From IMG/VR virus record IMGVR_UViG_3300027770_001980, positions 124,001 through 188,000 of that record: a DNA stretch of 64,000 nucleotides; one strand, 5' to 3'. Of the stretch, positions 1 through 64,000 are shown piece after piece. The notes below the pieces were generated by a model. That model was given only the letters and a program-made list of their open reading frames with translations. It made no database searches and had not been told where the DNA came from. Position 1 is the stretch's first letter, and each line of letters opens with the position of its first letter. Both the position numbers and the translations under genes were made by a program.

Positions 1-41
1 CTATAGCTAACAGGATTTAGTTCGATGTTTTTGTAAGGCAT
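1..41 (-). CDS. 5' end of a gene running off the window (MPYKNIELNPVSYS...); by position after gp5 possibly a gp25-like baseplate wedge protein
   Basis: ATG at 41-39, preceded 4 nt upstream by the late-promoter-like TAAATA (51-46, minus strand); open to the window edge. Product inferred from synteny only. Confidence 0.4.
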   Translation of the reverse strand, partial: MPYKNIELNPVSY

Positions 42-71
42 ATTATATTTATTAGAGTAAAAAATGTCTAA

Positions 72-2597
72 TTAATCAATCGCAGGTTTACGTTTTCCAG
101 GATTGTCTCCTCCTGTTTTAATAGGGTTACCATCTCGATCGGTAATGATACCACCGTTCCTATCTTTCCATACATTATCCGGCACAGGCTTGGCCGGGGT
201 AGGGCCGTTGAGTTGCCCTAAGAAGCATTCGTAATATCCACGTTTCTTACGATGTATATCTTCGGTACAAAATCCCACTGCTTTATATCCTTCTTCAAAA
301 TAATCCGATCCCGGATTAGTATTAAGTTTCTGTAAACGTGGATGAGATGTAAAATATAATACCGCAATTATTCCTGCATATTTAGGATCATTAACTGAAG
401 TTGGATTATCAAGCAATTCTGTATCAACTGTTGAGTGTCCTCCCATATATAATAATTTACTAAATTTAGCGTAGTTACCCCTACCGGTCAATTGAATATA
501 TCCACGCCCTATATATTTTCCACCATCTCCTGGTTGTGTATTTCCTAATCCTGCACCTTTCTTGGTATTATATCCATACAAAATTTCAGGTAGGCTATTA
601 TTAGGATTTCCTGCATACTGTTGTGCCAATGCCTGATCACCTTTGAATACACTTGGGAATACAGCTAACAATCTATCTGCCTTATAACTAAATCCTTCAG
701 TTACTGTTTTCCATCCGCTCTCTCCGCCGGCGATGGCTAATATAGTCGCCACCATATAAGGACTGGTTATGTTTAATTTTTTACAGGCTGCTTTGATATC
801 GGCAATACCATCTTGTGAGGATTTAGCATTGATATCTTTACCATAAACAATATCACAGGTATTAGGAAGCACATCGGGCTTATTAGCAGGCTCCCCTGTC
901 TGAGAAGCGGCAGAGGCTTCCGAAGGTGATACCCCAGCAGCAACACGGGGACTTGCAGGTACTTCCGGTGTAGCTGATTGTGCAGGTTGTGCAGGCACAG
1001 GTGGTGGACCCGGTTGTGCAGGTATTACCGGCCGAGCTGGTTTAGCTGGAATTGCTGGTGTATCTGCCGCAGTGACATCTGTAGCTGCTGGTGTAAATTG
1101 ATTAGGATTTATATTTTCATGCTGTGGCCAAGGTTCATGAGTTGGTACACGTTGCATAATGGATTTAATATCATCTGCTTTATAGAATACACCATTAGAC
1201 CATCCTTTACTAACCTGTCTGTTTGGTAGATTGAATATAGTTAACGGTGGTGGAATTTCAGCATTGTCAGCTACAGCTGGTGTACCTGCGATAGGTCCAT
1301 TTAGATGTATATTCGCACCTGTCGCTACAATATTTCCTGTTGCAGACAAATTGAGTTGAGAATTGGTACCAAGATTAACATTTTTTACTGCTGCAATATT
1401 TGTCGAGCCTTCTGAAGATAGTTTAGTATCTCTGTTGACATTTAAATTGTAATCGTTAGAAACTGATATCTTTACAGTATCACCTATTGTTTCATCGTGA
1501 GAACCCTTAACAACAATTTTTTGCTCTTTATCTACCAGCAAGAAATTATAGCCGTTTATGTTGGTTTCCATATTTTCGCCTGCCTTGACATGTATATGTC
1601 GACCTGCTTCAAAATTAATATCTCTATCAGCACGGAAATTAAAATCATTTTCAGAATGTATGCTGATACTATCTTTAGCATAGATATCAATTTTACCATT
1701 AGATGTTAGTTCTATCCATGCGGTGCCTTTACTATTTGCAATATATATTAAATCCTGACTATTGTGCATTAATATCTGATGACCTGTTCTGGTACGTATC
1801 CTAACCAATTCGTTCTGTCCATTAACATCTCCGTCATCCATGACAAATGTAGTTCCTCCCAATCTACTCACAGGGGCACTGGTTTTTCCTGGACTATCTT
1901 GATTACCTTCATTTGAGCTATATCCTATTTGACCACGTTTTGCACCAGAGCTGGTATCTAATGGGCCTGGTGTAGATATTCCAAATACCCCACTTGGAAC
2001 TTCTCTACGAGCACTACTGGATGTTACACCTCTAATAGTATCTAATAATAATCCCTGATTTAATAATCTATCAGCAAATGGGTGTATGGGTTTGCCCCAT
2101 CTTTCAGGGTTAGGATTTTTTAAATCTTTTGAACCTTTATGAAACTCTGCCACAGGTAGATAATCAGTTCCGTACTTTCTTCTCTGCTCATCAGTCATCT
2201 CAACTTGTTTACTGGCCGCAATACCGGGTATCATATGATTTTGGAAAATATCCGATATACATCCCATCCAGTATCCCTGATTAACATCTCCATCAATAAA
2301 GATAACCATCCCTCGTGTTCCGATATCCGGTGGCATCATCCACATACCGTAACTTTTTTGTACATCGTTGAAGTCGCTGCTATTAGTACCTTCAAATTTA
2401 AGTGCAGTTACACCCGAAAACGGACTGAGATATTTTACTCTATACGTTTCGCCCTGCTTTTCCTCATCGGAATCAACACCTTGCTTTATTGCAACTTCTA
2501 ACCCGCCCATATATGATGGGTCAAGGTGGTTGGTTATTACTGCTAAGAAAGGACCTGGGCTCGATAACGGGCCCGATGCTCTTGTTTCATCACTCAT
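72..2597 (-). CDS. gp5: Baseplate hub/central spike protein (gp5-like) with C-terminal GH19-family lysozyme/chitinase domain
   Basis: N-terminal OB-fold-type GPFLAVITNHLDPSYMGGLEV; beta-helix-type repeats (RIRTRTGHQILMH...DFNFRADRDINFEAG); Pro/Ala linker; GH19 signature YIGRGYIQLTGRGNY. Confidence 0.8.
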   Translation of the reverse strand: MSDETRASGPLSSPGPFLAVITNHLDPSYMGGLEVAIKQGVDSDEEKQGETYRVKYLSPFSGVTALKFEGTNSSDFNDVQKSYGMWMMPPDIGTRGMVIFIDGDVNQGYWMGCISDIFQNHMIPGIAASKQVEMTDEQRRKYGTDYLPVAEFHKGSKDLKNPNPERWGKPIHPFADRLLNQGLLLDTIRGVTSSSARREVPSGVFGISTPGPLDTSSGAKRGQIGYSSNEGNQDSPGKTSAPVSRLGGTTFVMDDGDVNGQNELVRIRTRTGHQILMHNSQDLIYIANSKGTAWIELTSNGKIDIYAKDSISIHSENDFNFRADRDINFEAGRHIHVKAGENMETNINGYNFLLVDKEQKIVVKGSHDETIGDTVKISVSNDYNLNVNRDTKLSSEGSTNIAAVKNVNLGTNSQLNLSATGNIVATGANIHLNGPIAGTPAVADNAEIPPPLTIFNLPNRQVSKGWSNGVFYKADDIKSIMQRVPTHEPWPQHENINPNQFTPAATDVTAADTPAIPAKPARPVIPAQPGPPPVPAQPAQSATPEVPASPRVAAGVSPSEASAASQTGEPANKPDVLPNTCDIVYGKDINAKSSQDGIADIKAACKKLNITSPYMVATILAIAGGESGWKTVTEGFSYKADRLLAVFPSVFKGDQALAQQYAGNPNNSLPEILYGYNTKKGAGLGNTQPGDGGKYIGRGYIQLTGRGNYAKFSKLLYMGGHSTVDTELLDNPTSVNDPKYAGIIAVLYFTSHPRLQKLNTNPGSDYFEEGYKAVGFCTEDIHRKKRGYYECFLGQLNGPTPAKPVPDNVWKDRNGGIITDRDGNPIKTGGDNPGKRKPAID

Positions 2598-2621
2598 GTT
2601 TATTATCCATAATTATTAATA

Positions 2622-7830: not shown

Positions 7831-8742
7831 ATGACTACCCACATATCCCCTACTGGGAAAAAAGTAAAATACCTAAACAATCGCGATTTATTGACAGAGA
7901 TACACAGAAGTAAATGCTCATTTGGTAGTTTTACAGATCCAAAATATCAACAACACGACATCATATTAACAAATTTGGATAAAGTTAATATTAGAACCGT
8001 AGCCGAAGCCAAACGTAATAGAGCGAAACGAGAAGGTATATTGGCGTTTGGTGCAGCCAGAATAGCAGGCGATAAAAAAATCAAACTTGCAGAATGCACA
8101 GCAGACTATAAAACCATAGCTAAAACCGATATTGTGATACGTATTATGACTTTTGATCACATACCCATGGCACCGGGACGTAAAAAAACACTAAAGAATA
8201 CAGCCGATAGTCATGAGAAAGTTAACTTTCCTCCTTATCAACATTGGAAGTTTAACGACGAAGATGAATTGATCTGCGTAGGTAAGAGCCACTGGAAAGG
8301 CCCAATCGAAACTGGCAAATTTAGCAAAGATCATGGACGCATTACTGAGAACTTGGGCAGGATGTTTATTAAATTAAGTGAACGATATGCACAAAGAAGC
8401 AACTGGCGGGGGTATACTTACAATGAAGAAATGCGGGGACAGGCGATCCTACAATTAAGTCAAATTGGACTACAGTTTGACGAGAGCAAATCAGAGAACC
8501 CATTTGCATACTACACCGCAGCAGTCACTAACTCATTTACTCGTGTTCTAAATATTGAAAAGAAAAATCAAAACATTCGAGATGACATGTTGGAAGAAGC
8601 CGGATTGACTCCAAGTATGACTCGACAGTATAAACAAGAGTATGCTGAAGAAACTGCTCGTCAAGCAGAACTATACAAACACTTTAGGCAACCTAAATCA
8701 GAAGAAACAAGCATTGAGGAAGATGAGCAAACTGATGTTTGA
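7831..8742 (+). CDS. gp55: Late-transcription sigma factor, T4 gp55-like, with a long internal insertion
   Basis: YLNNRDLL at the N-terminus; NWRGYTYNEEM and SENPFAYYT...SFTRVLNIEKK match gp55-family motifs; adjacent to gp47/gp46 as in T4. Confidence 0.85.
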   Translation: MTTHISPTGKKVKYLNNRDLLTEIHRSKCSFGSFTDPKYQQHDIILTNLDKVNIRTVAEAKRNRAKREGILAFGAARIAGDKKIKLAECTADYKTIAKTDIVIRIMTFDHIPMAPGRKKTLKNTADSHEKVNFPPYQHWKFNDEDELICVGKSHWKGPIETGKFSKDHGRITENLGRMFIKLSERYAQRSNWRGYTYNEEMRGQAILQLSQIGLQFDESKSENPFAYYTAAVTNSFTRVLNIEKKNQNIRDDMLEEAGLTPSMTRQYKQEYAEETARQAELYKHFRQPKSEETSIEEDEQTDV

Positions 8743-22070: not shown

Positions 22071-22078
22071 ATATTGAT

Positions 22079-22351: not shown

Positions 22352-22477
22352 AAATCTTATGCCCAATGGCCTAAAATGAGCCGTTTTTGGCCTATTTCCC
22401 ATACCTTTATTAAAATAGGTTTAAATAAGCACACAATACAGCCTTGCCGCGCAATCTAATTAAGGAGAATACACGCA

Positions 22478-26438: not shown

Positions 26439-26460
26439 TCCGTTACTTGTAATACAAACA

Positions 26461-26484
26461 AAAACCCGCTTCGGCGGGTTTTTT
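26461..26484 (+). terminator. Rho-independent terminator after the capsid gene
   Basis: AAAACCCGC-TTCG-GCGGGTTTT-TT. Confidence 0.9.
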
Positions 26485-26501
26485 GTTGAATTAAATATGT
26501 A

Positions 26502-28010: not shown

Positions 28011-28049
28011 CCATTTACAGCGTAGTATATGCTGTAAGGTAAATACGGT

Positions 28050-42347: not shown

Positions 42348-42368
42348 CATTTAGGTAAATATTATACT

Positions 42369-45300
42369 ATGGCACAATTACTATCAGGAACAAGAATATA
42401 CGGAACAGGAACTGTTGATTCTCAATTGTTTATTAACGGAAATACTGCTGCTACCAGTACAAATACTGGTGCTTTACAAGTTGTTGGTGGTGTTGGAGTT
42501 GGTGGTAATCTGTTTGTAGGCGGCACATTATATGCATCCGCAGTAACTGGAAATATTACTACCGCTACGAATTTAGCAGGCGGCAACGCCTCACAATTAG
42601 CATTCCAAACTGCCCTGGGTGTTACCAGTTTTGTCAGTTCGGGTACCGCAGGACAAATACTGGTCAGTGCTGGTAGTACATCAACTGGCCCGGTATTCAC
42701 CAATACATCAACCATTAGGGTAGGATTTGCTACCAATGCTATAAATGCTTCAACACTATTAAGTGGAACTGCACAATCAATTGTATATCAATCAAGTACA
42801 GGAACAACCGCTTTCTTATCTGCAAGTACATCCGGTTATCTGTTATCAACACAAGGTACCGGTGCTGCACCTGCATGGATTTCTCAAGCAAGTCTAACAG
42901 CAGGTGGTGTTGATACGGTAAAAACTATAGAAAATGCAACGAATTCTATTTTTTATCCAACTTTTGTAAATTCTAATAATGTGTCTGCAACTGGCGAGTC
43001 TTTATATACCACCAGCAGTTTTAGTATCAACCCATATACTGGCTATGTAACAATTGGTACAAGTTCTACTATTAGCGGTTCTGTCTCTGCTCCGTTAACT
43101 GTATATAAAGATGGTTCACAAGAATCAAACACTCCTGTTGGAACATATAATGTTGCTCAATTTGGTAATTCGGCCGGTTCTCGAGGCGTTGGAATAAACT
43201 ATGACCCAACTAATGTAACCGGTGGATTGTATAGTTTTGGAATTAATTCTAATTTAATTTTTTATACCCCAACTGGTTCAACATACAAAGAACGTATGCG
43301 CATTTCTACCGGCACCGTTGGAATCGGAACGGTTGGATTAGTTACAACTGCTCCATTGCATGTTGCAGCACCACTTTCAACTGGAACTATTGTTACAGTT
43401 GGAATGTTTACACAAAACATTGATACAGCACTAACTACTGGTTCAGGAGTAAGGCTTGTTCTCGCAGCCGGTAACAGCCAGTCAAGGGCTGCAATTATCG
43501 AAGCCGCTGTTGAAAGTGGCCTTAACGCACACTACCTTGCATTCTCTACTAATGCCAGCGGTGCGAGTCCAACTGAGAAGATGCGTATCACCTCCGCCGG
43601 TGGGATTGCATTTGGTGGAGCAACTAACTATGGTGCTACTGGAAATGTATTAGTTAGCCAGGGCGATGCTGCTCCACAATGGACTGCTATAGGAGCAATT
43701 GCTGCCGGTCAAGCAACCACTGCAACCAACTTAGCAGGCGGCAGTGCTGCACAGATAGCATTCCAAACAGCTATAGGAAAAACCAGTTTTGCAGGTCCTG
43801 GCACAGCAGGACAAATACTGGTCAGTGCTGGTAGTACATCAACTGGCCCGGTATTCACCAATACATCAACCATTAGGGTAGGATTTGCTACCAATGCTAC
43901 AACATTAGAAAATGGAACTGCCCAATCAATTGTATATCAATCAAGTACAGGAACAACCGCTTTCTTATCTGCAAGTACATCCGGTTATCTGTTATCAACA
44001 CAAGGTACCGGTGCTGCACCTACGTGGATTTCTCAAGCAAGCATAACAGCAGGTGGTGTTGATACGATAAAGACAGTGGGTCAAGCAAGCATTGCTGATT
44101 ATTATCCAACTTTTGTAAATTCTAATAATGTGTCTGCAACTGGCGAGTCTTTATATACCACCAGCAGTTTTATTATCAACCCTGCGACAAAGGAAATATC
44201 TGTTAATGGAACAGGTAGATTTACTAGTCCAGCAAACGGAACAACAGGTGCGGTTGTATTACGAGCAAATACTACAAATACAGCAACAACTTATCTACAG
44301 TGGTCCAATAATGCGAGTACTATTCAATATGGTGCCATAGGTGTTACAAGTGCGACTGATATAGTATTTTTAAACAGTAGTGTTGAGCGTATGCGTATCA
44401 CCTCCACTGGTGCTATTGCATTCAGTGGAGCAACTAACTATGGATCAAGTGGAAATGTATTAGTTAGCCAGGGCGATGCTGCTCCACAATGGACTGCTAT
44501 AGGAGCAATTGCTGCCGGTCAAGCAACCACTGCTACTAATTTAGCAGGCGGTACAGCAGGACAACTACCTTATCAAAATGCCCCAGGTGATACCAGTTTT
44601 GCAGGTCCTGGCACAGCAGGACAAATACTGGTCAGTGCTGGTAGTACATCAACTGGCCCGGTATTCACCAATACATCAACCATTAGGGTAGGATTTGCTA
44701 CCAATGCTACAACATTATCAAGTGGAACTGCACAATCAATCGTATATCAATCAAGTGTAGGAACAACTGCTTTCTTAGCAGCCGGTACTTCAGGACAAGT
44801 ATTACAAACAAATGGAACTGGCTCTGCACCTACATGGGTATCAACTGGATCATTGACTGCCGGTCAAGCAACCACTGCTACTAATTTAGCAGGTGGTACA
44901 GCAGGACAATTAGCATTCCAAAATGCCCCAGGTGATACCGGTTTTGCAGGCCCTGGCACAGCAGGACAAATACTGGTCAGTGCTGGTAGTACATCAACTG
45001 GCCCGGTATTCACCAATACATCAACCATTAGGGTAGGATTTGCAGATAATGCTTCAACATTATTAAGTGGAACTGTACAATCAATCGTATATCAATCAAG
45101 TACAGGAACAACCGCTTTCTTATCTGCAAGTACATCCGGTTATCTGTTATCAACACAAGGTACCGGTGCTGCACCTGCATGGATTTCTCAAGCAAGTCTA
45201 ACAGCAGGTGGTGTTGATACGGTAAAGACCGTGGGTCAAGTAACCAGTTCTACTTTTTATCCAGTATTCGTTAATTCCAATAATTCATCTGCAACTGGTG

Positions 45301-52288: not shown

Positions 52289-53497
52289 TTAGTTATCTGC
52301 TCTTGGTTTTAGTACTTGACTCAACGCTTGACGTTCTTGAACAACTTCTCCAGCAATGGTTGCAGTATTGATATTATTAACAAAACTTGATTTTAGTTTT
52401 CTTCTTACCAATATCGGATTGTCAGTTTGTGTCTCTCCCAACATACTGGTTGTCATTCTAACATTATCTTCATATTTAATCCAATGTTTTCCATCATGCC
52501 TAAACAGCCTATTAGGCAAATAATCTGTTCTTAGAAAGAAATCACCCAATTGAGGATTTGCAGGAAAATTAATTCCAAATCCATATGCTGATCCATTTGG
52601 CGGAATTCCATCACCTGTTAGATATCCAATAAAATAATTTTTAGAAGGTGTATTTAAAACAGCCGATGCATCTAAATATGACATTGACATATCGCCGCTG
52701 GCATCTGTATTTGAAATAGACGCATCTGCAATAGATGCTAATTGCGTTCCTGTATTTTCTATAGGAATTACAAAAAATTGTTCTGTTTTATAACCGCTTG
52801 CTTCAACATCTGCTTGTGCCTGTTGAATAATTTGATTGTTAATCTCAATATTTTTCTTGTAGGTTGACAATAAATCACGTAATGTACTTCCGTCTTCGGC
52901 ACCCGAATCTGCATCAAGAATCTCTTTAAATTCTTGACTATCGACCAACGGAACACATTTAGCTCTAATTAGGTGAGGGTACCATGTTTGACTATATCCC
53001 GATGCTGGCCTATTAACTTCTGATACTACATAAAATCTCTTTAGTGCTACAATACTATCATCTAATGCGTATTCATCTTTCTGGTGTGGTAATTCTATAA
53101 CATCACCGGACATTATTTTTCTACCCAAAGCATCGTAACTACTTCTTAAGTGGAAACTAATCATAACATTATCATTGTTTAAGAACAATCCAAATTGACT
53201 TAAATTAAAATCTAAATCTTGCAAGGTATAAATTCCACGGATAACATACACATCCGGGTCATAGTGTCTATCTCTATTTTCCATGAATAGCAAATCCTGT
53301 ATTCCTAACTCAGGAATAGCAGTTGCTGAATTGTTTGGAATAGTAGGGCTACTGGTTCCTTCTAATGGATCAACGGTCCCTAAATATTTGTGTATATAGA
53401 CATCAGTTCCGCCAACTTGAAATTCTTCGTTGATCACTCGATCTATAAATTTAAAATCATTGCCCTTTTCGGGACGGTACATAGAAAGTCTTGGCAT
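52289..53497 (-). CDS. gp14: Neck protein, gp14-like
   Basis: IQDLLFMENRDRHYD, LSQFGLFL, GDVIELPH motifs; TAAATA-N7-ATG. Confidence 0.7.
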   Translation of the reverse strand: MPRLSMYRPEKGNDFKFIDRVINEEFQVGGTDVYIHKYLGTVDPLEGTSSPTIPNNSATAIPELGIQDLLFMENRDRHYDPDVYVIRGIYTLQDLDFNLSQFGLFLNNDNVMISFHLRSSYDALGRKIMSGDVIELPHQKDEYALDDSIVALKRFYVVSEVNRPASGYSQTWYPHLIRAKCVPLVDSQEFKEILDADSGAEDGSTLRDLLSTYKKNIEINNQIIQQAQADVEASGYKTEQFFVIPIENTGTQLASIADASISNTDASGDMSMSYLDASAVLNTPSKNYFIGYLTGDGIPPNGSAYGFGINFPANPQLGDFFLRTDYLPNRLFRHDGKHWIKYEDNVRMTTSMLGETQTDNPILVRRKLKSSFVNNINTATIAGEVVQERQALSQVLKPRADN

Positions 53498-53504
53498 AGT
53501 ATTC

Positions 53505-53520
53505 TATTTATGGCTAAATA
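53505..53520. promoter_or_regulatory. Palindromic divergent late promoter TATTTA-tggc-TAAATA for gp14 (minus) and gp13 (plus)
   Basis: Inverted repeat; boxes lie 7 and 5 nt from their ATGs. Confidence 0.7.
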
Positions 53521-53525
53521 TCAGT

Positions 53526-54284
53526 ATGACCGAGAACGAAAACGAACGCCAAAAGATAGTAGAATATGTCAAAGCCATGTTAGGCGGTGGTATGATTGAC
53601 GTTGAACTTGACCCTGTACATTACAATACTGCAATTGACAGGGCATTAGCTAAATTCCGTCAAAGAAGCAGTAATGCATCTGAAGAAAGTTTTGGATTTT
53701 TAACCTTACAGTTAGATCAAAATGAATATATTCTACCACAGGAAGTCACTAATGTGCGCCAAATATTCCGACGTAGTATTGGTAGCAGATCAGGCGGCGG
53801 AAATGGTGGTACATTGTTTGAACCATTCAACTTAGCCTATAGTAACACATATCTACTAACCTCTACTAATATGGGTGGATTGGCTACATATTTTGCATTT
53901 GCCAGTTATCAGAAGTTAGTCGGTAAGATGTTCGGCAGTGAAATCAATTTCACATTTAACAAAACTACCAAGAAACTTACAGTTATGCAACGTCCGCGGG
54001 CAGAAGAAGAAGTCATGTTATGGTTATATAACTTCCGTCCGGACTTTAACTTAATGCAGGATCAGTTTGCAGGACAATGGCTCAAAGATTATGCATTAGC
54101 GACCTGTAAACTCATGCTTGGCGAAGCACGTGAAAAGTTTGGAAGTATCGCGGCACCATCTGGCACCACACAATTAAATGGTGCATCTCTTAAGGGTGAG
54201 GGTAAAGCTGAAATTGAAACACTTGAACTCGATTTGGTCAACTACAAAGATGGTGGAACACCATTAACATTTGTAATTGGCTAA
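53526..54284 (+). CDS. gp13: Neck protein, gp13-like (start moved to MTENENER at 53526)
   Basis: MLGGGMIDVELD, WLKDYALA..K.MLGEAREKF, LNG motifs; upstream part of the track ORF overlaps gp14 and its promoter. Confidence 0.8.
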   Translation: MTENENERQKIVEYVKAMLGGGMIDVELDPVHYNTAIDRALAKFRQRSSNASEESFGFLTLQLDQNEYILPQEVTNVRQIFRRSIGSRSGGGNGGTLFEPFNLAYSNTYLLTSTNMGGLATYFAFASYQKLVGKMFGSEINFTFNKTTKKLTVMQRPRAEEEVMLWLYNFRPDFNLMQDQFAGQWLKDYALATCKLMLGEAREKFGSIAAPSGTTQLNGASLKGEGKAEIETLELDLVNYKDGGTPLTFVIG

Positions 54285-55299: not shown

Positions 55300-55396
55300 A
55301 TGCGCCCTTTTGTTGCCCTTTTCACTTGTATTTAACCCCTTGTTTTTTTCAAGACCGGCTAAATAACTCAAGTAATCCAATTAGGAGATATTACAT

Positions 55397-58366
55397 ATGG
55401 CAACTTTGAATTCACCAGGCGTAAGCGTATCAGTAATTGACGAGAGTTTTTACACAACATCGGCTCCAGGCACCGTGCCTATGATATTTGTAGCGTCAGC
55501 ACAAGATAAAACAAATCCAAGTGGATCAACAGCACTCGGAACCACCGCAGCTAATGCTGGTAAAGTTTGGTTGATGACCAGCCAACGTGATCTAACCGAC
55601 ACGTTTGGAACACCGAAATTTTATACAGATGCAAGCGGAAATCCTCAACACGGAAACGAGTTGAACGAATATGGACTACAGGCAGCTTATAGTGCATTAG
55701 GTGTTAGTAGCCGTGCATATGTAGTTAGAGCAGATATTGACACCGGGATGTTAATTCCAACCAGTAATATACCAAAAGGTGAACCAGTTGGTGGTACATA
55801 TTGGGTCGATACTAATGCCAGCCAATATGGTATTAAAGAATGGAATAATACTACAAAGAAATTTACAGTTAAGACTCCATTGATACTAAACGACGATTCT
55901 ACATCAGACGAAATAGACATGGGAGAACCTACTTCCAATGTTGGTAAAGACGGCGATTACTGCATAGTAGTAACTAAAGATAATGAAAACAGTCTTTATC
56001 ATAGAGCAAGTGGTACTTGGAATTTAGTATATGACACCTTTGAAGGCGGCAAGTCTGTACAAATTAGTACACATTATGATTATCCTGATACAACCAGTTG
56101 GACAACAGGTAGTATATGGATTACCACAACAACAGCAACCAATGGAGCAAAATGGACTGTTAAGAGATATAATAGTGCATCTCAGGGATGGGATACTGTT
56201 ACTGCTCCTTTATACAGCAGTATTCCAGCAGCTACAAAAGCTATCGACGGAACCGGTGGACTAAACATCGCAACTGGTAGTGTATTCATCGAAACAGATT
56301 ATAATCAAAGTGATAGTCAAACAGCAACATTTAAATTATGGAGACGTGCTCATAAAGGTATTACCAGCATTGTTAGTGCAGCAAGCACTGCTGTTACTGC
56401 CAGCCAGGCGTATGACTTTAAAATTAGAGAAACCACAGCGGGTTCCGATACATGGAGTTCCTGGATCGATGGTACAGTCATGGGTGATGGAGCCAAGACA
56501 TTTGGATCAGCATTAGCAGACGCTATCAATTCAATGGGAACAGATAACATCTCGGCCAGTTATAATTCTACCACACACAAAATTACAGTAAGACATAATT
56601 TAGGTGGTGATTTTGAGATCCGAGATACTACCGATCCATTTTCGTCAGCAGGATTCACTGTATATAATACTGTAACCAAGACAGGTACCGATAATCTATA
56701 TACGCCTAACACAGGTGATCAAGGTGACAATGCAACTTTCTTAGCCACCAACTGGAAAGCATTAGTATACGAAGCTAAAAATGATGCTCCTTATACTACA
56801 CCATCGGATGGCACATTATGGTGCAATGCAACCCACGACGAAGTTGACATCATGATACACGATGGTTCAACATGGGTAGGATATGCCACCGTATATCCAG
56901 ATGCAGATCCACTTGGCCCTATCGTTGCGGTAATTGAGCCAATTGAACAAAGCGATGGTAGCGATCTTGTAGATGGAGATATTTGGGTATCTACTGCAAA
57001 CATGGATAGATACGGCAATGATCTTTATGTGTATGACTCAACTATCATGACTGGTAGCAAGTGGGTAGCACAGGATACAACAGATCAGTCAAGCCCAACA
57101 GGCTGGTTATTTGCAGATGCACGTTGGTCAAACAGCGGTACAGATGACTTCGAATATTTAGAAAGCATTCCTAATCTGTTAGTTAGCGATTACTTAGATC
57201 CCGATGCTCCTGATCCTGCATTATATCCAAAAGGTATGCGTTTATGGAATACACGTCGTAGTGGTAACAATGTTAAGAAATTCGTTTCTGGATACATTGA
57301 CATCACTGCTAACGATGGATTGAATACTCGCTATCAAGATGAAGATATGGCAGCTTACAATATCGATCGTTGGGTAAGTCAAAATAATGTTGCAGAAGAC
57401 GGGTCCGGTGTATTTGGCAGATTAGCACAAAGAGCACAGGTAGTCGCAGCCTTGAAAGAAACAATAGACACTAACTCATTGATTAGAGATACAGATACAG
57501 TAGTGTTTAATTTGATCGTAGCACCCGGATATTCTGAAGCTATTGCTAATATGGTTAGTTTCAACACTGATCGTGGAATCACCGCTTTCGTCATCGGTGA
57601 TACACCATTTAGATTAAAGCCAACTGGTACAGACTTAGCAGCCTACGGTAAAAATACTAATTTAGCATTGGATAACAATGACAAAGGTGCAGTCACACAT
57701 GATGAATACATGGCTATGTATTACCCAAGTGGTTATACCAATGATAATTCTGGTAACTATATTGTTGTTCCACCGAGCCACATGATGCTAAGAACATTCA
57801 TTAATAACGACAATAAGAGTTATGTATGGTTTGCTCCAGCTGGAACTCGTCGTGGTGGTATTGATAATGCTACAAGCGTTGGATATATTACTGAAGAAAA
57901 TGAATTCAAAACTGCGGCAATATATCAATCACTACGCGATGTTATGCAAGATCCAACAGTTCAACTTAACCCGATCGCTACACTGGTCGGCGCTGGTTTA
58001 GTAGCATTTGGTCAACGTACTCGTGCAAGAAATGCCAGCAGTTTAGATAGAGTTAATGTTGCTCGTTTAGTTTGCTACTTACGTCGTCAATTAGATATTC
58101 TTGCAAGACCATATTTGTTTGAACCTAACGATGCACAGACCCGTCGTGAGATCAAAGCGGCTGCAGAAAGTCTAATGCAAGAGTTAGTAGGACAACGAGC
58201 ATTATATGACTACATCGTAGTATGCGATGAAAGTAATAATACTCCTTCAAGAATTGACCGTAACGAATTGTACATGGATATTGCTATTGAACCTGTTAAG
58301 GCAATCGAGTTTATATACATTCCGTTGAGACTGAAAAATACTGGCGCAATCAAAGCTGGTTTATAA
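55397..58366 (+). CDS. gp18: Contractile tail sheath protein with inserted domains (989 aa)
   Basis: SPGVSVSVIDES, WFAPAGTRRG, DRVNVARL, LFEPND, EFIYIPL motifs; TAAATA (55360) and SD AGGAG. Confidence 0.92.
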   Translation: MATLNSPGVSVSVIDESFYTTSAPGTVPMIFVASAQDKTNPSGSTALGTTAANAGKVWLMTSQRDLTDTFGTPKFYTDASGNPQHGNELNEYGLQAAYSALGVSSRAYVVRADIDTGMLIPTSNIPKGEPVGGTYWVDTNASQYGIKEWNNTTKKFTVKTPLILNDDSTSDEIDMGEPTSNVGKDGDYCIVVTKDNENSLYHRASGTWNLVYDTFEGGKSVQISTHYDYPDTTSWTTGSIWITTTTATNGAKWTVKRYNSASQGWDTVTAPLYSSIPAATKAIDGTGGLNIATGSVFIETDYNQSDSQTATFKLWRRAHKGITSIVSAASTAVTASQAYDFKIRETTAGSDTWSSWIDGTVMGDGAKTFGSALADAINSMGTDNISASYNSTTHKITVRHNLGGDFEIRDTTDPFSSAGFTVYNTVTKTGTDNLYTPNTGDQGDNATFLATNWKALVYEAKNDAPYTTPSDGTLWCNATHDEVDIMIHDGSTWVGYATVYPDADPLGPIVAVIEPIEQSDGSDLVDGDIWVSTANMDRYGNDLYVYDSTIMTGSKWVAQDTTDQSSPTGWLFADARWSNSGTDDFEYLESIPNLLVSDYLDPDAPDPALYPKGMRLWNTRRSGNNVKKFVSGYIDITANDGLNTRYQDEDMAAYNIDRWVSQNNVAEDGSGVFGRLAQRAQVVAALKETIDTNSLIRDTDTVVFNLIVAPGYSEAIANMVSFNTDRGITAFVIGDTPFRLKPTGTDLAAYGKNTNLALDNNDKGAVTHDEYMAMYYPSGYTNDNSGNYIVVPPSHMMLRTFINNDNKSYVWFAPAGTRRGGIDNATSVGYITEENEFKTAAIYQSLRDVMQDPTVQLNPIATLVGAGLVAFGQRTRARNASSLDRVNVARLVCYLRRQLDILARPYLFEPNDAQTRREIKAAAESLMQELVGQRALYDYIVVCDESNNTPSRIDRNELYMDIAIEPVKAIEFIYIPLRLKNTGAIKAGL

Positions 58367-58398
58367 TAGGTAAATAACATAGATTAAGGAGCATTTAT

Positions 58399-59049
58399 AT
58401 GCCGGTTTCAAGTTTAAATAGATTTACAGTACCATTATCCGGAACACAAGGTGGCGGAACACAGGGACTGTTGATGCCAAAACTAAAGTATCGCTTTCGC
58501 GTTACTTTGGATCAGTTTGGTATTCCTGGACAACCAAGTACAGAATTAACCAAACAAGTTATTACTGTAAGTCGCCCGGAACTTACTTTTGATGATGCTA
58601 CATTGGAAGTATACAACAGTAGAATTAAGTATCTTGGTAAGCACAAGTGGGGCGATCCAAAATTAAAAATTCGTGATGATGCCAGTGGTGTTGTTAGTAA
58701 GAAAGTCGGTGAACAGTTACAGAAACAATTTGACTTCTTTGAGCAATCAGGTGCAGCATCTGGTATTGATTATAAGTTCAGAATGCGTGTAGAAATTCTC
58801 GACGGCGGCAATGGTGCTTACGAGCCTGTTACACTTGAAAGTTTTGAATTCTTAGGATGCTTTGTTAAACAAGTAACTTATCAAGGTGGTGACTACGCTT
58901 CTAATGACGCAATGGATATTGAAATGACTTTATCAGTTGATAATGTAATCCAGTTAGAAGCACCTGGTGGTGCTTCCAGCGGTATTGGATTAGATATCGG
59001 CAGAGTGGTTCGCCCACCAACCGCACAAGGTCTCGGTACAGGCGGTTAA
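58399..59049 (+). CDS. gp19: Tail tube protein
   Basis: LMPKLKYRFRV and tube-type beta pattern; follows the sheath with own TAAATA, SD and terminator. Confidence 0.8.
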   Translation: MPVSSLNRFTVPLSGTQGGGTQGLLMPKLKYRFRVTLDQFGIPGQPSTELTKQVITVSRPELTFDDATLEVYNSRIKYLGKHKWGDPKLKIRDDASGVVSKKVGEQLQKQFDFFEQSGAASGIDYKFRMRVEILDGGNGAYEPVTLESFEFLGCFVKQVTYQGGDYASNDAMDIEMTLSVDNVIQLEAPGGASSGIGLDIGRVVRPPTAQGLGTGG

Positions 59050-59070
59050 TCAATAACGTCCTCCAAGCAG

Positions 59071-59099
59071 AACCTGGCTTAAACCCCAGGTTTTTCTTT
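59071..59099 (+). terminator. Rho-independent terminator after the tube gene
   Basis: AACCTGG-CTTAAACC-CCAGGTT followed by TTTCTTT. Confidence 0.7.
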
Positions 59100-59113
59100 G
59101 GCTAAATAATAAT

Positions 59114-60346
59114 ATGAGTAATAGTCAAGCAAATGGATATTTAATAAACGCCGCCGGTGCTATAGGCAAACCTATCATGTCAGATTGGCAACATGCGAGT
59201 AAATTGTATGTTGATGAACTTTATAAAAGAGCTCCAAAATTTGGATTTCTTTATTTTGTAAATTTTAATATTGTTAGAAATGATACGATAATGGATCAAG
59301 GGTGGAAAGAGGAAGGATCCTATCAAGTTGGATTACTTGCTAAGAAAATTGATCTTCCTAAATTTTCAATCGAAACTGAAACATTAAATCAATATAACAG
59401 AAAAACAGTTATACAAAAAGGAATCAAATACAATAATATAAATGTAGAATTTCACGACGACCATGGAAATATTGCAAATAATCTCTGGGTAAATTACTAC
59501 AAACATTATTATTTTGATAGCCAACAACAACCAGAAGCATATCACGATACAAAATATCAAAATACAGATTATCAATACGGAAGATATAATAATGATTTAA
59601 AACCAAGTAATTTTTTCGGAACTATTGAAATATTTGTATTGAATCAAAAAAGATTTACAAAATATACATTGGTCAATCCAAAAATTACAGAGTGGAAACA
59701 CGACGAAGTAGCTCAAGATGCTGGTAGTAAAATTTTACAGAATAGCATGACTATAGCATATGAAAATGTTTTATATGATGAAGGCGTGGTTGATGCAGAT
59801 TTCGCAGGGCAGTTTTATGATAAAACACAAAGCCCTACGACACTTGGTCCAGACAATGAAGTTTTATATAAGAAGAGGCTTGAATCACCATTTGATAAAC
59901 CCGGCAAAGATACTGTGTTTAGCAACAGACCGCGCCCTCGTGGATTTGATAACGAGTTTGGAAAAAGAGACTTTAAAAAAGAGAAAGGTGCATTTCTTCC
60001 ATCTGGTAATTTTGATAAAACATATAATCCAAGAACGTATGGAGCAATACGACCTAAAGCACCAGGCCAATTTTCACTGATAGCAGGTATATTGATGAAC
60101 AATTATCTCAATCAAAATGGACTTACAAGACAAACTGCTACGGCATATAATATAGCAGGTAGTGTAATGAAGGCGACATTGAGTTCGGGTGCAGGAAAAT
60201 ATGCCGACCCACCAAGTACAGAAACAGCACCGGGTGTATTCCAATTGCCAGGCGGGGTTGGAATCAATATTTTCAAAGGATTTAATACCACAGTAGATGG
60301 TGGCATAAGAGCCAATCCTGCTGCTATATTATTCCCAAGCAGGTAA
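59114..60346 (+). CDS. Tail-tube paralogue/baseplate tube initiator (gp54/gp48-like)
   Basis: LAKKIDLPKFSIETETLNQYNRK, INVEFHDD, NSMTIAYE tube-fold motifs; TAAATA-N5-ATG. Confidence 0.6.
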   Translation: MSNSQANGYLINAAGAIGKPIMSDWQHASKLYVDELYKRAPKFGFLYFVNFNIVRNDTIMDQGWKEEGSYQVGLLAKKIDLPKFSIETETLNQYNRKTVIQKGIKYNNINVEFHDDHGNIANNLWVNYYKHYYFDSQQQPEAYHDTKYQNTDYQYGRYNNDLKPSNFFGTIEIFVLNQKRFTKYTLVNPKITEWKHDEVAQDAGSKILQNSMTIAYENVLYDEGVVDADFAGQFYDKTQSPTTLGPDNEVLYKKRLESPFDKPGKDTVFSNRPRPRGFDNEFGKRDFKKEKGAFLPSGNFDKTYNPRTYGAIRPKAPGQFSLIAGILMNNYLNQNGLTRQTATAYNIAGSVMKATLSSGAGKYADPPSTETAPGVFQLPGGVGINIFKGFNTTVDGGIRANPAAILFPSR

Positions 60347-61154: not shown

Positions 61155-61167
61155 AATAAGTAATATT

Positions 61168-61644
61168 ATGACTAAACGACTTGAAGACCTACTAAACGTA
61201 GAACCCTCTGAACCTCTAATTACTCCTACAAGTGTAGATGCAACTCCGGTTACAACTATTGACATAGAGGATAAATTAGAAGAATTTGATAAAATCTCAG
61301 CCGCATTACCCCGTGTAAAAGGATTGGGCGATATCAGTGATGCAGAATTTGATTCATTGGCCGCAAAAGCAGAACAAGCATATGACGATCTAATGGACTT
61401 AGGAATGAATGTAGAAGCACGTTATGGTAGCAAGATGTTTGAAGTTGCTGCTACTATGATGACTGCTGCTATCACCGCTAAGAGCGCAAAGATTGATAAG
61501 AAATTAAAGATGATCGATCTACAGATTAAAAAGTTAGCAATTGATAGAAAAAACGGAAAAGAAGGAGAAACAGTAGAAGGAGAAGGATATATCCTTACTG
61601 ATAGAAATAGTATCCTTGCAAAGTTAAAAGATTTGAAATCTTAA
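61168..61644 (+). CDS. gp16: Terminase small subunit
   Basis: Helical acidic/basic protein with ARYGSKMFEVA resembling the gp16 PRAFEV motif; near the large subunit. Confidence 0.6.
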   Translation: MTKRLEDLLNVEPSEPLITPTSVDATPVTTIDIEDKLEEFDKISAALPRVKGLGDISDAEFDSLAAKAEQAYDDLMDLGMNVEARYGSKMFEVAATMMTAAITAKSAKIDKKLKMIDLQIKKLAIDRKNGKEGETVEGEGYILTDRNSILAKLKDLKS

Positions 61645-61655
61645 TAAATAATACT

Positions 61656-62246
61656 ATGAAAACATTTACTCAATACCTATCCGAGTCAACTAAAAAGTAT
61701 GACTTCCGCATTAAATTTGCTGGGGAGTTCACTACCGAGCAAGAAGCCTCAATGAAATCATTATTGAGCAAATATGCAGTTAGTGGCTTTAAAAAGACTG
61801 GCACTACTCCTATCCAAGCATTACCATTAGACTTTCCTCAAGTTAAAAACTGTGAAGTTAACATCTATGAAGTAGTGTTAGATTACCCTACTACACAGCA
61901 AGAACTTACTGAATACTTAACTTCAGAGTTGAAAGTCAGTAAAAGAAATTTAGTTGTTCGTAGTCCATTTGAACATACTGAAGAATATCAGCATACTGAA
62001 GAACCACGTAAAGGTGCATTGTTAGATGACCCAAACTATTCAGAAGCAGGTAGTCCTAAATTTGAGGATTACTATGGAGACAAGTATAACTCGGGTTTTG
62101 TTAAAGAGCTAAATGATATTCTTAAACTCCAACGCAAAGCACGTGGAGAAGAGATACCCACAGAAAGTGCCGCTAAATTTAATACCGACACTGAAGAAAA
62201 ACAAGCAAGCCTTTTAAAGTTTCAGGCCCAAGACCTAAGGAAATAA
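61656..62246 (+). CDS. Conserved hypothetical late protein
   Basis: TAAATA-N5-ATG; MKTFTQYLSES start, a typical protease-cleaved head-protein leader. Confidence 0.55.
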   Translation: MKTFTQYLSESTKKYDFRIKFAGEFTTEQEASMKSLLSKYAVSGFKKTGTTPIQALPLDFPQVKNCEVNIYEVVLDYPTTQQELTEYLTSELKVSKRNLVVRSPFEHTEEYQHTEEPRKGALLDDPNYSEAGSPKFEDYYGDKYNSGFVKELNDILKLQRKARGEEIPTESAAKFNTDTEEKQASLLKFQAQDLRK

Positions 62247-62881: not shown

Positions 62882-62901
62882 TAAACATTAGAACGTAGTT
62901 C

Positions 62902-62929
62902 AAATAGCCTCTTCGGAGGCTATTTTTTT
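62902..62929 (+). terminator. Rho-independent terminator
   Basis: AAATAGCCTC-TTCG-GAGGCTATTT-TTTT. Confidence 0.9.
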
Positions 62930-62943
62930 CATTAAATAAGATT

Positions 62944-64000
62944 ATGGGATCAAAAAACTTAGACGGACAATTAGTAAAGAAGGCACACATCACTCAGAAA
63001 TTCACTGAGAAAGATATAGAAGATCTGGCGGCCTGTATGGACCCTATCAACGGTCCACACTATTTCCTGGAACACTTCTTCTACATACAACATCCTATCA
63101 AGGGTAAACTATTGTATGAACCTTACGAATATCAAAAAAGACTAATTGACAGTTATCACAATAATAGATTCAACGTAAATCTACTTCCTCGTCAAACTGG
63201 TAAAACAACTACAGCGGCAGGATATCTATTGTGGTTTGCTATGTTTGTTCCAGACAGTACCATACTTGTAGCAGCACATAAGCATACAGGTGCTCAAGAG
63301 ATTATGACCCGTATTAGATATGCCTACGAGTTGTGCCCTGATCATATTCGCTGCGGCTCTAATAGTTATAATAAACAAAGTCTGGAATTTGATAACGGTA
63401 GCCGTATCATGGCACAAACCACTACAGAAACAACAGGTCGTGGTTTGTCATTATCATTACTATACGCAGACGAGTTTGCATTCGTACCACCAAACATTGC
63501 CAGCGAATTCTGGACTTCAATATCACCTACATTAAGCACAGGTGGTAAGGCCATTATCACCAGCACTCCTAACAGTGATGAAGATCAGTTTGCACAGATA
63601 TGGAAAGAAGCAAATTACAGATTTGACGAATACGGTAACGAACAACCGTTGGGTCGTAATGGGTTCTTTCCATTCAGAGCATTCTGGCATGAACATCCAG
63701 ATCGTAATGAAGAGTGGGCAGAAACAGAACGTAGTCGTATCGGGGAAGAACGCTTCCGACGTGAGCATGATTGCGAATTCTTGGTATTTGATGAAACACT
63801 AATCAGCAGTCTTAAGTTAGCTACATTGGAAGGAAGTCGCCCTATAATGAACATGGGCGAAGCACGTTGGTACAAGAAGATCAATCCTATGAGCACATAT
63901 ATCGTATCAATGGATCCAAGTCTTGGTACAGGCGGAGATCCTGCTGCTATACAAATTGTAGAGATACCAAGTTTCGAACAGGTAGGAGAATGGACCCACA
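62944..64000 (+). CDS. gp17: Terminase large subunit, truncated by the window end (absent from the ORF track)
   Basis: Manual translation MGSKNLDGQLVKK...LPRQTGKT (Walker A)...LLYADEFAFV (Walker B)...IVSMDPSLG (nuclease); TAAATA-N5-ATG. Confidence 0.93.
   Translation, partial: MGSKNLDGQLVKKAHITQKFTEKDIEDLAACMDPINGPHYFLEHFFYIQHPIKGKLLYEPYEYQKRLIDSYHNNRFNVNLLPRQTGKTTTAAGYLLWFAMFVPDSTILVAAHKHTGAQEIMTRIRYAYELCPDHIRCGSNSYNKQSLEFDNGSRIMAQTTTETTGRGLSLSLLYADEFAFVPPNIASEFWTSISPTLSTGGKAIITSTPNSDEDQFAQIWKEANYRFDEYGNEQPLGRNGFFPFRAFWHEHPDRNEEWAETERSRIGEERFRREHDCEFLVFDETLISSLKLATLEGSRPIMNMGEARWYKKINPMSTYIVSMDPSLGTGGDPAAIQIVEIPSFEQVGEWTH

What the first reader, a model, noticed from the sequence alone, without database searches (positions are those of the whole stretch)
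41..62946. Two-tier late expression: many genes appear leaderless (TAAATA-N4-7-ATG)
Seen: box-to-ATG spacings of 4 nt (41 minus, 26502, 28050), 5 nt (22079, 53526, 59114, 61656, 62944, and variant TAAGTA at 61168) and 7 nt (42369, 53497 minus), none with room for an SD. High-copy genes (head operon, 27063, sheath, tube) have the same box plus a longer leader with AGGAG. Known: the T4 TATAAATA box lies about 5-6 nt upstream of +1, so these mRNAs would start at or next to the AUG. Inference: stoichiometry is encoded by leaderless versus SD-led translation, which also hints at a host tolerant of leaderless mRNA or at stress-resistant translation.
Basis: partly seen in the sequence, partly recalled or inferred. 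Interest (0 to 1): 0.6.

Follow-up and report, generated by a model that had tools for sequence, protein, structure and literature searches.

The report
Late promoters fused to start codons
In this uncultured freshwater giant phage and its relatives, about half of the T4-style late promoter boxes sit 4-7 bases before an ATG with no ribosome-binding site, so these genes are most likely made from leaderless mRNAs, an arrangement absent from T4 and the cultured relatives examined.

Summary
TAAATA is depleted in the genome, yet it is the most enriched hexamer 4-7 nt before ORF-opening ATGs (42-fold, p about 1e-27). There are 22-25 such genes on the 221-kb contig, 10 of them in the window.

These genes lack a Shine-Dalgarno (SD) sequence, always start with ATG, and have T or C at -1 in 47 of 49 cases. 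Three follow an intrinsic terminator directly. Two divergent pairs share only 28 nt. Box and spacing are conserved in relatives whose proteins are 43-82% identical.

The same box lies 15-35 nt before SD-led genes (sheath, tube, head operon). The motif is avoided equally on both DNA strands inside genes, which marks a DNA signal, and a gp55-like late sigma is encoded at 7831-8742. With T4 geometry (box end at -6), a 5-nt spacer puts +1 on the A of ATG.

T4, Salmonella phage Munch and PA5oct have 0-1 such genes. No transcript 5' ends could be obtained, so "leaderless" remains an inference (about 0.7). The stoichiometry idea is only loosely supported, and the host is unknown.

Verdict: a new variant of a known kind, of moderate to high interest.

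The parts
7831..8742 (+). gp55-like late sigma factor gene (303 aa)
   Evidence: phrog_12791 'sigma factor for late transcription' at 2.9e-82 and phrog_234 at 4e-26. Aligned with T4 gp55, it keeps pocket residues N13, F86, Y97 and T99 and carries an insertion of about 120 aa.
39..51 (-). Box TAAATA (46-51) + 4 nt + ATG (41-39); the 145-aa gene runs off the window's left edge
   Evidence: The orthologue in G001 keeps a box-proximal ATG.
22068..22081 (+). Box (22068-22073, its TAA is the portal stop codon) + 5 nt + ATG of an 81-aa gene
   Evidence: 38 of 38 orthologues have the box at d=4-7, 3 of 38 have an SD, all start with ATG. The box is kept even where the portal stop lies elsewhere, and codon periodicity starts at codon 2.
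26457..26504 (+). Terminator hairpin (26457-26487, -16.5 kcal/mol) + U-run, box 26492-26497, 4 nt, ATG of a 2OG-Fe(II) oxygenase
   Evidence: In relatives other, unrelated cargo genes occupy this slot with the same terminator-box-N5-ATG layout.
28040..28052 (+). Box + 4 nt + ATG of a 174-aa gene
   Evidence: 10 of 10 orthologues have the box at d=4-6 and none has an SD. Most relatives have a terminator just upstream. Independent gene callers use the same start.
42356..42371 (+). Box + 7 nt + ATG of a 1392-aa fibre-like protein
53495..53528 (.). Divergent pair: ATG 53497(-) with box 53505-53510(-), d=7; ATG 53526(+) with box 53515-53520(+), d=5; only 28 nt lie between the two ATGs
   Evidence: Both boxes and spacings are conserved in L011-L014, including L014 where the intergenic region is longer, and in G001. 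A second such pair lies at genome 207545(-)/207575(+).
59069..59116 (+). Terminator hairpin (59069-59094, -14.9 kcal/mol), box 59103-59108, 5 nt, ATG of a 410-aa tube-like protein
   Evidence: The stem sequence differs in relatives while pairing is kept (read by eye), and the sequence gaCTAAATAtt..ATG is conserved.
61157..61170 (+). Variant box TAAGTA + 5 nt + ATG of a 158-aa gene; status uncertain
   Evidence: TAAGTA is conserved in L011-L013. It lies within the 13-nt gap after the upstream gene's stop codon, so translational coupling is an equally good reading.
61645..61658 (+). Box + 5 nt + ATG of a 196-aa virion protein
   Evidence: d=5-7 in relatives. In G001 the box lies 21 nt upstream with a weak AGGA, which is a switch of class.
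62902..62946 (+). Terminator hairpin (62902-62925, -13.9 kcal/mol) + U-run, box 62933-62938, 5 nt, ATG of the large terminase
   Evidence: The same layout occurs in L013 and G001. In Salmonella phage Munch the TerL gene instead has the box about 42 nt upstream, plus an SD.
55360..55399 (+). SD-led class: box 55360-55365, 31-nt spacer with AGGAG, ATG of the tail sheath
   Evidence: Box, leader and SD are conserved in L011-L014.
58371..58401 (+). SD-led class: box 58371-58376, 22-nt spacer with AAGGAG, ATG of the tail tube
22422..22480 (+). SD-led class: box 22422-22427, 50 nt, AAGGAG, ATG of the first head-operon gene (followed by protease, scaffold and capsid)
   Evidence: 52 of 53 orthologues have an SD, and 48 of 53 have a box 30-54 nt upstream.

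Best explanation
TAAATA (often ATAAATA) is the -10-like core of late promoters read by host RNA polymerase carrying the phage's gp55-like sigma factor. The promoters come in two layouts.

In the first layout the box lies 15-35 nt (up to 50) before the ATG, and the leader carries a Shine-Dalgarno (SD) sequence, as in T4. In the second layout the box ends 4-7 nt (mode 5) before the ATG. Transcription would then begin at, or within a base or two of, the A of AUG. The first cistron would be a leaderless mRNA, translated by the SD-independent pathway that depends on a 5'-terminal AUG.

Shown here: the motif, its positions, its conservation, its character as a DNA-level signal, the sigma gene, and the lack of SD. 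Inferred: where transcription starts, and that these mRNAs are translated without a leader. Weaker inference: the leaderless layout gives lower or differently regulated output, suited to enzymes and minor virion parts.
For: 1) A gp55 homologue is encoded in the window and keeps residues that in T4 hold A-12, A-9 and A-8 (PMC7892883).

2) That numbering places TATAAATA at -13..-6. TAAATA therefore ends at -6, and a 5-nt spacer puts +1 on the A of ATG. The observed mode is d=5.

3) Inside genes TAAATA is depleted equally on the sense strand (56 against 119 expected, z = -7.8) and the antisense strand (52 against 120, z = -8.0), relative to synonymous shuffles. This is what a DNA signal predicts, not an RNA signal.

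4) The same box stands at a T4-like distance before the SD-led sheath, tube and head-operon genes.

5) Box-proximal genes have no SD and use ATG only. GTG and TTG show no peak, although they open 21% of SD-led genes.

6) Position -1 is T or C in 47 of 49 box-proximal sites against 70 of 140 SD-led genes (p = 6e-10). This matches the pyrimidine(-1)/purine(+1) start-site preference.

7) Intrinsic terminators lie directly before three boxes, leaving 12-15 nt for both promoter and 5' end. Two divergent gene pairs share only 28 nt.

8) Conservation. 38 of 38 orthologues of 22079 and 10 of 10 of 28050 keep the box at d=4-7, while flanks and spacer are fully diverged. The class is conserved between G000 and G001 (p = 4e-10). 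Switches of class occur by a change in box-to-ATG distance together with gain of an SD.

9) Whole-genome counts at d=4-7 versus d=12-39: G000 22/26, G001 35/51, T4 0/37, Munch 1/56, PA5oct 1/53.

10) ATAAATA was independently predicted as the late promoter of the related phages CBB and GAP32 (PMC5259590).
Against: No transcript 5' end was mapped. The only RNA data available were assembled metatranscriptome contigs, which cannot show starts and did not cover 26400-28400.

The start-site distance is borrowed from T4. This sigma carries an insertion of about 120 aa, H95 is replaced, and no gp45-type clamp was found, so the geometry could differ.

Spacers of 4 and 7 nt need a flexible start site or leave a 1-2 nt leader. 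The d=4 sites lack the -1 pyrimidine bias.

Only 3 of 26 sites have a clear terminator directly upstream. Many of the other genes could also be translated from read-through transcripts.

The host, and whether it translates leaderless mRNA efficiently, is unknown.
Confidence: 0.7

Rival explanations
1. The box is a promoter, but these genes are translated mainly from longer read-through or polycistronic transcripts, by termination-reinitiation or SD-independent internal initiation. On this view the box-ATG proximity reflects genome compaction, with the promoter serving downstream genes, rather than a leaderless mode.
For: Most box-proximal genes (23 of 26) have no clear terminator just upstream. 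At 22079 the box overlaps the portal stop codon, 8 nt before the ATG. At 61656 and 64545 the box follows closely on the upstream gene's end. Forty-seven other genes on the contig have neither an SD nor a box, so SD-less initiation must occur here anyway.
Against: Compaction does not explain the narrow spacing (mode 5), the -1 pyrimidine, the ATG-only rule, or the retention of the spacing when the intergenic region is long (L014) and when the portal stop lies elsewhere. The cases behind terminators and the 28-nt divergent pairs cannot rely on read-through.
Confidence: 0.13
2. At 4-7 nt from the ATG the motif acts in the RNA, as an A/U-rich, unstructured translation-initiation enhancer that replaces SD. 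It is not a promoter at these sites.
For: A/U-rich sequences before start codons are known to favour SD-independent initiation in many bacteria (general knowledge). The motif sits where an SD would be.
Against: The motif is depleted equally on the antisense strand inside genes, which an RNA signal does not predict. An identical motif lies at T4-like promoter distance before SD-led genes. A general A/U-rich enhancer would not need an invariant hexamer beside a freely varying spacer. The terminator immediately upstream would remove the transcript that is supposed to carry it.
Confidence: 0.06
3. Leaderless or near-leaderless 5' ends are produced by endonucleolytic processing at or after UAAAUA in longer transcripts, not by initiation there.
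For: Two sites lie 11-17 nt after tRNA 3' ends inside a tRNA array, where processing is certain. Phages of this superfamily encode sequence-specific RNases such as T4 RegB (general knowledge).
Against: No candidate nuclease was identified. The both-strand avoidance and the match to T4 promoter geometry favour a DNA signal. The sites behind terminators would have little precursor to process.
Confidence: 0.06
4. The pattern is a chance product of AT-rich intergenic DNA or of TAA stop codons next to start codons.
For: The genome is 61% A+T. One box (22079) contains a stop codon.
Against: Enrichment is 42-fold with p about 1e-27, and replicates in G001. Hexamers of the same composition show no comparable peak. 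T4, Munch and PA5oct, which have equal or higher A+T, have 0-1 such genes. The box is invariant across orthologues with diverged flanks.
Confidence: 0.01

Closest known systems
Bacteriophage T4 late promoters (TATAAATA, gp55/gp33/gp45)
   Same: Both have a gp55-type sigma, an A/T-rich -10-like box with no -35 element, and the box placed before virion genes. The SD-led class here looks like T4, with the box 15-35 nt before the ATG.
   Different: The core is only TAAATA or ATAAATA. No gp45-type clamp was detected, and none is reported for the related phage CBB. About 45% of promoter-proximal genes have the box 4-7 nt from the ATG and no SD. T4 has none of these: 0 of 37.
Rak2/GAP32/CBB/Munch-type jumbo myoviruses (predicted ATAAATA late promoter)
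   Same: These have the closest cultured capsids (66-70% aa), a syntenic structural module, a gp55-like sigma, and a predicted ATAAATA late motif (PMC5259590).
   Different: In Munch the boxes lie 20-50 nt upstream with an SD, including before TerL; 1 of 57 is box-proximal. PA5oct, Vibrio phage 2.275.O and Phosso show no enrichment.
Thermus phage phiYS40 leaderless middle/late mRNAs
   Same: It is a large myovirus in which most middle and late transcripts lack a leader, so the stage-specific promoter abuts the start codon (review PMC3594737).
   Different: The phage lineage and promoter type are unrelated. Its host phylum (Deinococcus-Thermus) itself uses -10 boxes adjacent to ORFs widely (PMC12340547). 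Starts were mapped experimentally there; here they are only inferred, and SD-led and leaderless late genes coexist under one box.
Leaderless genes of bacteria, as modelled by GeneMarkS-2 (a -10 box a few nt before the start codon); lambda cI from PRM
   Same: A -10-type element 5-7 nt before an AUG, no SD, and dependence on AUG.
   Different: Here the element belongs to a phage late sigma rather than the host's housekeeping sigma. It defines a co-regulated late set, conserved across an uncultured phage clade.

Membership tests
T4-type (gp55-dependent) late promoter | The phage encodes a gp55-family sigma factor | tested here: met
   Window 7831-8742: phrog_12791 at 2.9e-82 and phrog_234 at 4e-26. 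It is 31% identical to T4 gp55 and keeps N13, F86, Y97 and T99.
T4-type (gp55-dependent) late promoter | TATAAATA-like -10 element without a -35 element, placed upstream of late (virion) genes | tested here: met
   The TAAATA core is invariant, an A precedes it in 57% of cases, and nothing is conserved further upstream. It stands before the sheath, tube, head operon, terminase, adaptor and other genes. The leading TA of the T4 octamer is not conserved.
T4-type (gp55-dependent) late promoter | The motif behaves as a DNA signal: avoided elsewhere on both strands | tested here: met
   Sense z = -7.8 and antisense z = -8.0 against synonymous shuffles.
T4-type (gp55-dependent) late promoter | Co-activation by the gp45 sliding clamp and gp33 | tested here: not met
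   PF02916 is found in T4 (2.9e-35) but not in G000, G001 or Munch. PF09116 is not found in G000; that search had no positive control. gp33 was not searched for. CBB authors also report no gp33 or gp45. G000 is only 62% complete.
T4-type (gp55-dependent) late promoter | Transcription starts about 6 nt after the last A of the box | not testable with these tools
   Only assembled RNA contigs were available. The geometry is taken from T4 cryo-EM numbering.
Leaderless mRNA genes | The transcript 5' end coincides with (or lies within about 3 nt of) the A of the start codon | not testable with these tools
   Inferred from box position (mode d=5) and from pyrimidine at -1 with A at +1 in 47 of 49 sites. 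There is no 5'-end data.
Leaderless mRNA genes | No Shine-Dalgarno sequence, and no alternative SD-led start | tested here: met
   Of 26 sites, 24 have no SD of 4 nt or more and 2 have marginal 4-mers; alternative SD-led starts are rare. Coding periodicity and N-terminal conservation begin at codon 2. Public gene calls use the same starts.
Leaderless mRNA genes | The start codon is AUG (not GUG or UUG) | tested here: met
   ATG peaks at d=4-7 (25 in G000, 36 in G001). GTG and TTG stay at noise level (3 and 1), although they open 21% of SD-led genes (p = 0.008). All 48 orthologues use ATG, whereas the scaffold gene uses TTG in 46 of 78.
Leaderless mRNA genes | The gene is the first cistron of its transcription unit | tested here: inconclusive
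   This is clear for the three sites behind terminators and the two divergent pairs. For sites inside same-strand gene runs (22079, 61656, 64545) the unit boundary is not known.

The most novel reading that the evidence does not exclude
An aquatic clade of Rak2-like jumbo phages has split its late regulon into two translation channels under one sigma factor. One channel is SD-led mRNAs for bulk virion proteins. The other is truly leaderless mRNAs for enzymes, minor parts and swappable cargo genes. On this reading the phage also tunes the ribosome pool to serve both channels: a close relative encodes ribosomal protein bS21. That would make leaderless translation a programmed, phage-controlled layer of late gene dosage rather than a by-product of compaction.
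Probability: 0.12. Interest if true: 0.8.

Novelty: new variant of a known kind. Interest (0 to 1): 0.6.

Why it matters
T4 late transcription is a textbook system, and its promoters have always been described with SD-bearing leaders. This lineage comprises hundreds of environmental contigs. In it the same type of promoter has repeatedly been placed against the start codon.

That predicts a large leaderless late regulon, which can be tested directly by 5'-end mapping or by in vitro transcription with the recombinant sigma.

It also bears on gene calling in phage metagenomes, where SD-based start models will misjudge these genes. The compact terminator-box-N5-ATG cassette appears to be how new cargo genes are plugged in behind the capsid gene. 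And it raises the question of how phages balance protein dosage when one promoter type drives both abundant and rare products.

Tried and rejected
RNA evidence. One run search and one read-laying run (window 22400-28399, 6000 letters, four metatranscriptomes) returned only assembled contigs. These came mostly from relatives' capsid genes, gave no coverage at 26400-28400, and carried no start-site information. Exact-protein look-ups for the 81-aa and 174-aa genes found only DNA metagenome contigs.

Host. Relatives of the capsid gene in MAG bins are scattered over many phyla (Cyanobacteria, Bacteroidota, Proteobacteria, Patescibacteria and others), which suggests mis-binning, so no host can be named. 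The word search with the relative's bS21 returned unnamed metagenome proteins, many on contigs of 300-370 kb.

Clamp. Searches with Pfam gp45 models found nothing in this genome. Absence is not secure, because the contig is only 62% complete.

Literature. Six full-text searches found no description of leaderless late mRNAs in T4-superfamily phages. The library is incomplete, and the primary phiYS40 paper was not held. The phiKZ late TATG motif was considered as an analogue and rejected, because there +1 is the G.

Gene finder. My home-made gene finder mis-picks some internal starts and leaves gaps, for example at 1841(-) and 8041. The key statistics were therefore repeated without gene calls.


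Full report
**What the window is.** The window is bases 124001-188000 of a 221,356-bp linear IMG/VR contig from a freshwater metagenome. CheckV rates it 62% complete, and its G+C content is 39%. It carries the structural module of a T4-superfamily jumbo myovirus:
- baseplate hub with lysozyme, a gp55-like sigma, and gp47/gp46-like nuclease;
- portal, prohead protease, scaffold and major capsid;
- giant fibre-like proteins, sheath, tube, head-closure protein and large terminase.

The nearest cultured capsids are 66-70% identical at the protein level. They belong to Sinorhizobium phage Phosso, Vibrio phage 2.275.O, GAP32, CBB, Serratia phage BF, Munch and PA5oct. More than 600 IMG/VR contigs carry a capsid relative, and the best 80 are 76-94% identical.

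- TAAATA is under-represented. The window has 64 copies against 96 +/- 9 expected. The genome has 199 against 283-415 for hexamers of the same composition.
- The distance from a box to the next ATG opening 60 or more codons has a sharp peak: d=4: 7, d=5: 11, d=6: 2, d=7: 5. A second broad hump lies at about 15-35 nt.
- Without any gene model, TAAATA is the most enriched of all hexamers at d=4-7 before first-ATG ORFs: 21 of 277, 42-fold, p = 2.5e-27. This is on a par with AAGGAG. The independent 328-kb relative G001 gives 31 of 383, p = 1e-39.
- The contig has 22-25 such genes, 10 of them in the window. An eleventh carries the variant TAAGTA, and one more lies just past the right edge at 64545.

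**Are the ATGs the true starts?**
- In 18 of the sites the ATG is the first possible start in the frame.
- None has a real SD, and downstream SD-led alternatives are almost absent.
- Orthologues align from residue 1, with synonymous changes already in codons 2-3.
- In 31 distinct orthologues of 22079 and 7 of 28050, three-base periodicity starts at codon 2. The box is invariant, while the spacer and upstream flank are fully diverged at about 1.7 bits per position.
- JGI, ENA and Logan gene calls use the same starts.
- Three paralogues elsewhere on the contig (MRIAILL...) each keep the box.

**What is the box?** The evidence points to a DNA-level promoter element read by the phage's late sigma.
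- *The sigma is present.* A gp55 homologue is encoded at 7831-8742. It conserves N13, F86, Y97 and T99, residues that line the pockets holding A-12, A-9 and A-8 of the T4 late promoter. H95 is replaced by F, and there is an insertion of about 120 aa (PMC7892883).
- *The motif is avoided on both strands.* Inside coding regions the hexamer is avoided equally on the sense strand (56 against 119 expected, z = -7.8) and the antisense strand (52 against 120, z = -8.0), relative to synonymous codon shuffles. A signal read in mRNA would be counter-selected only on the sense strand.
- *It also sits at T4-like distance.* The identical box, with the same weak preference for A just upstream, lies 15-35 nt before SD-led genes such as sheath (d=31, AGGAG) and tube (d=22, AAGGAG), and 50 nt before the head operon (AAGGAG). 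These arrangements are conserved in relatives.
- *Others predicted it too.* ATAAATA has been predicted as the late promoter in the related phages CBB and GAP32 (PMC5259590).

**Why leaderless?** In T4 the flipped adenines at -12, -9 and -8 fix TATAAATA at -13..-6. TAAATA therefore ends at -6, and a 5-nt spacer places +1 exactly on the A of ATG. Five is the mode here, in G001, and across 80 related loci, where the counts are d=5: 63, d=4: 18, d=7: 9. Further points agree:
- *Position -1.* It is T or C in 47 of 49 sites with d=5-7, against 70 of 140 SD-led genes (p = 6e-10). This is the pyrimidine(-1)/purine(+1) preference of bacterial RNA polymerase.
- *Start codon.* Only ATG shows the peak. 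GTG and TTG open 21% of SD-led genes, and TTG opens the scaffold gene in 46 of 78 relatives, yet both are at noise level here.
- *Terminators.* Strong intrinsic terminators (-14 to -16.5 kcal/mol, each followed by a U-run) end 5-8 nt before the boxes of 26502, 59114 and 62944. That leaves no room for any other promoter or leader. In relatives the stem sequence of the 59114 terminator differs while pairing is kept, as read by eye from the sequences.
- *Divergent pairs.* Two divergent gene pairs have only 28 nt between their ATGs, each with its own box. When the spacer is longer in a relative (L014), each box stays at its own distance from its ATG.
- *Cargo slot.* Behind the capsid terminator different relatives carry different, unrelated genes, each with the same terminator-box-N5-ATG layout. 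The window's 2OG-Fe(II) oxygenase at 26502 is one of these and has no orthologue in the 80 loci.

**Comparative picture.** An unbiased orthologue analysis gives the following.

| Gene | Orthologues with box at d=4-7 (for 28050, d=4-6) | Orthologues with SD |
|---|---|---|
| 22079 | 38 of 38 | 3 of 38 |
| 28050 | 10 of 10 | 0 of 10 |
| capsid | 0 of 79 | 76 of 79 |
| scaffold | 0 of 78 | 78 of 78 |
| 22478 | 0 of 53 | 52 of 53 (48 of 53 also have a box 30-54 nt upstream) |

Between G000 and G001, whose proteins are 43-73% identical, the class is conserved (p = 4e-10). The few switches (61656, and genome 67880) involve a longer box-to-ATG distance plus a weak SD, as expected if the box is a promoter in both layouts.

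Whole-genome counts for first-ATG ORFs:

| Genome | Boxes at d=4-7 | Boxes at d=12-39 |
|---|---|---|
| G000 | 22 | 26 |
| G001 | 35 | 51 |
| T4 | 0 | 37 |
| Munch | 1 | 56 |
| PA5oct | 1 | 53 |

Pattern counts against a reversed control show no enrichment in Vibrio phage 2.275.O or Phosso, and only a weak one in G002. Some more distant contigs share the layout. One is a marine Mediterranean (MED) bin labelled Rickettsiales, and two are large contigs binned as Haliscomenobacter. The arrangement is therefore a derived trait of an aquatic sub-clade, not a property of the whole family.

**The stoichiometry idea.** The tendency is real but soft.
- All the obviously abundant proteins (capsid, scaffold, sheath, tube) and the first head-operon gene (22478) carry the strongest SDs, AAGGAG or AGGAG.
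- The box-proximal class contains the large terminase, an adaptor, a 2OG oxygenase, a tube-like paralogue, a fibre-like giant protein, an HNH endonuclease and unknowns.
- Against it: many low-copy genes are SD-led, and 47 genes have neither signal. Gene 22079 occupies the position that T4 gives to the prohead-core gene 67, an abundant core protein according to general knowledge of T4. No abundance data exist.
- I rate this part at about 0.35.

**Limits.** No transcript start was mapped. The RNA runs were held only as assembled contigs and were uninformative. The host is unknown. A gp45-type clamp was not detected, so activation may differ from T4. Spacers of 4 and 7 nt require flexible start-site choice or leave 1-2 nt leaders.

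**Comparison with what is known.**
- The promoter type matches T4 and Rak2-like late promoters.
- The leaderless layout resembles the middle and late genes of Thermus phage phiYS40 (PMC3594737).
- It also resembles the "-10 region adjacent to ORFs" of Deinococcus-Thermus (PMC12340547).
- I found no report of leaderless late genes in the T4 superfamily.
- I therefore class this as a new variant of a known kind, with 0.7 confidence in the leaderless reading.

Noticed in passing
G001:C1:151806-152012 (L159:1498-1704), not in the window: The 328-kb relative with 35-40 box-proximal genes encodes a ribosomal protein bS21 homologue (PF01165, 3.2e-16) directly after a ClpX-like gene. Close homologues sit on many 300-370 kb metagenome contigs. 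None was found in G000, which is only 62% complete. It may be relevant to how SD-led and leaderless mRNAs are balanced.
   Followed up: partly
L001:5650-18512 (genome 5.6-18.5 kb): There is an array of 41 tRNA genes. Two box-N5-ATG genes (genome 8883 and 11272) begin 17 and 21 nt after the 3' ends of tRNA-Ser and tRNA-Phe, with the box starting 6 and 10 nt after them.
   Followed up: partly
window 51721-52287 (-): A GIY-YIG homing endonuclease gene lies between the sheath-stabiliser and a virion gene. It is present only here and in the near-identical L010, and absent from L011-L014, so it looks like a recent mobile insertion.
   Followed up: partly
window 26502-26969 and the same slot in L017-L096: The position just behind the capsid terminator is a variable cargo slot. 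The 2OG-Fe(II) oxygenase here has no orthologue in the 80 related loci, which carry other unrelated small genes there, each with terminator-box-N5-ATG.
   Followed up: partly
window 24154 and its orthologues in L017-L096: The scaffold gene starts with TTG in 46 of 78 relatives (ATG in this window), always behind a strong SD.
   Followed up: no
window 7831-8742: Relative to T4 gp55, the gp55-like sigma has an insertion of about 120 aa after the N-terminal helix. Salmonella phage Munch shares it. No gp45-type clamp (PF02916) was found in G000, G001 or Munch.
   Followed up: partly
genome 11272(+), 17891(-), 23287(-) (L001, L002): Three paralogues of an unknown family (phrog_13607, N-terminus MRIAILL/MKIAILL) are scattered in and beyond the tRNA region, each with its own box 4-6 nt before the ATG. 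The G001 homologue has AAGG/GGT upstream instead of a box.
   Followed up: no
window 28602-34139, 36907-42126, 42369-46547: Three giant ORFs (1845, 1739 and 1392 aa) sit in the structural module. For the 1392-aa one, PHROGs gave only a marginal hit to a family of unknown function; the other two were not scanned. Their roles (fibres or whiskers?) were not examined.
   Followed up: no
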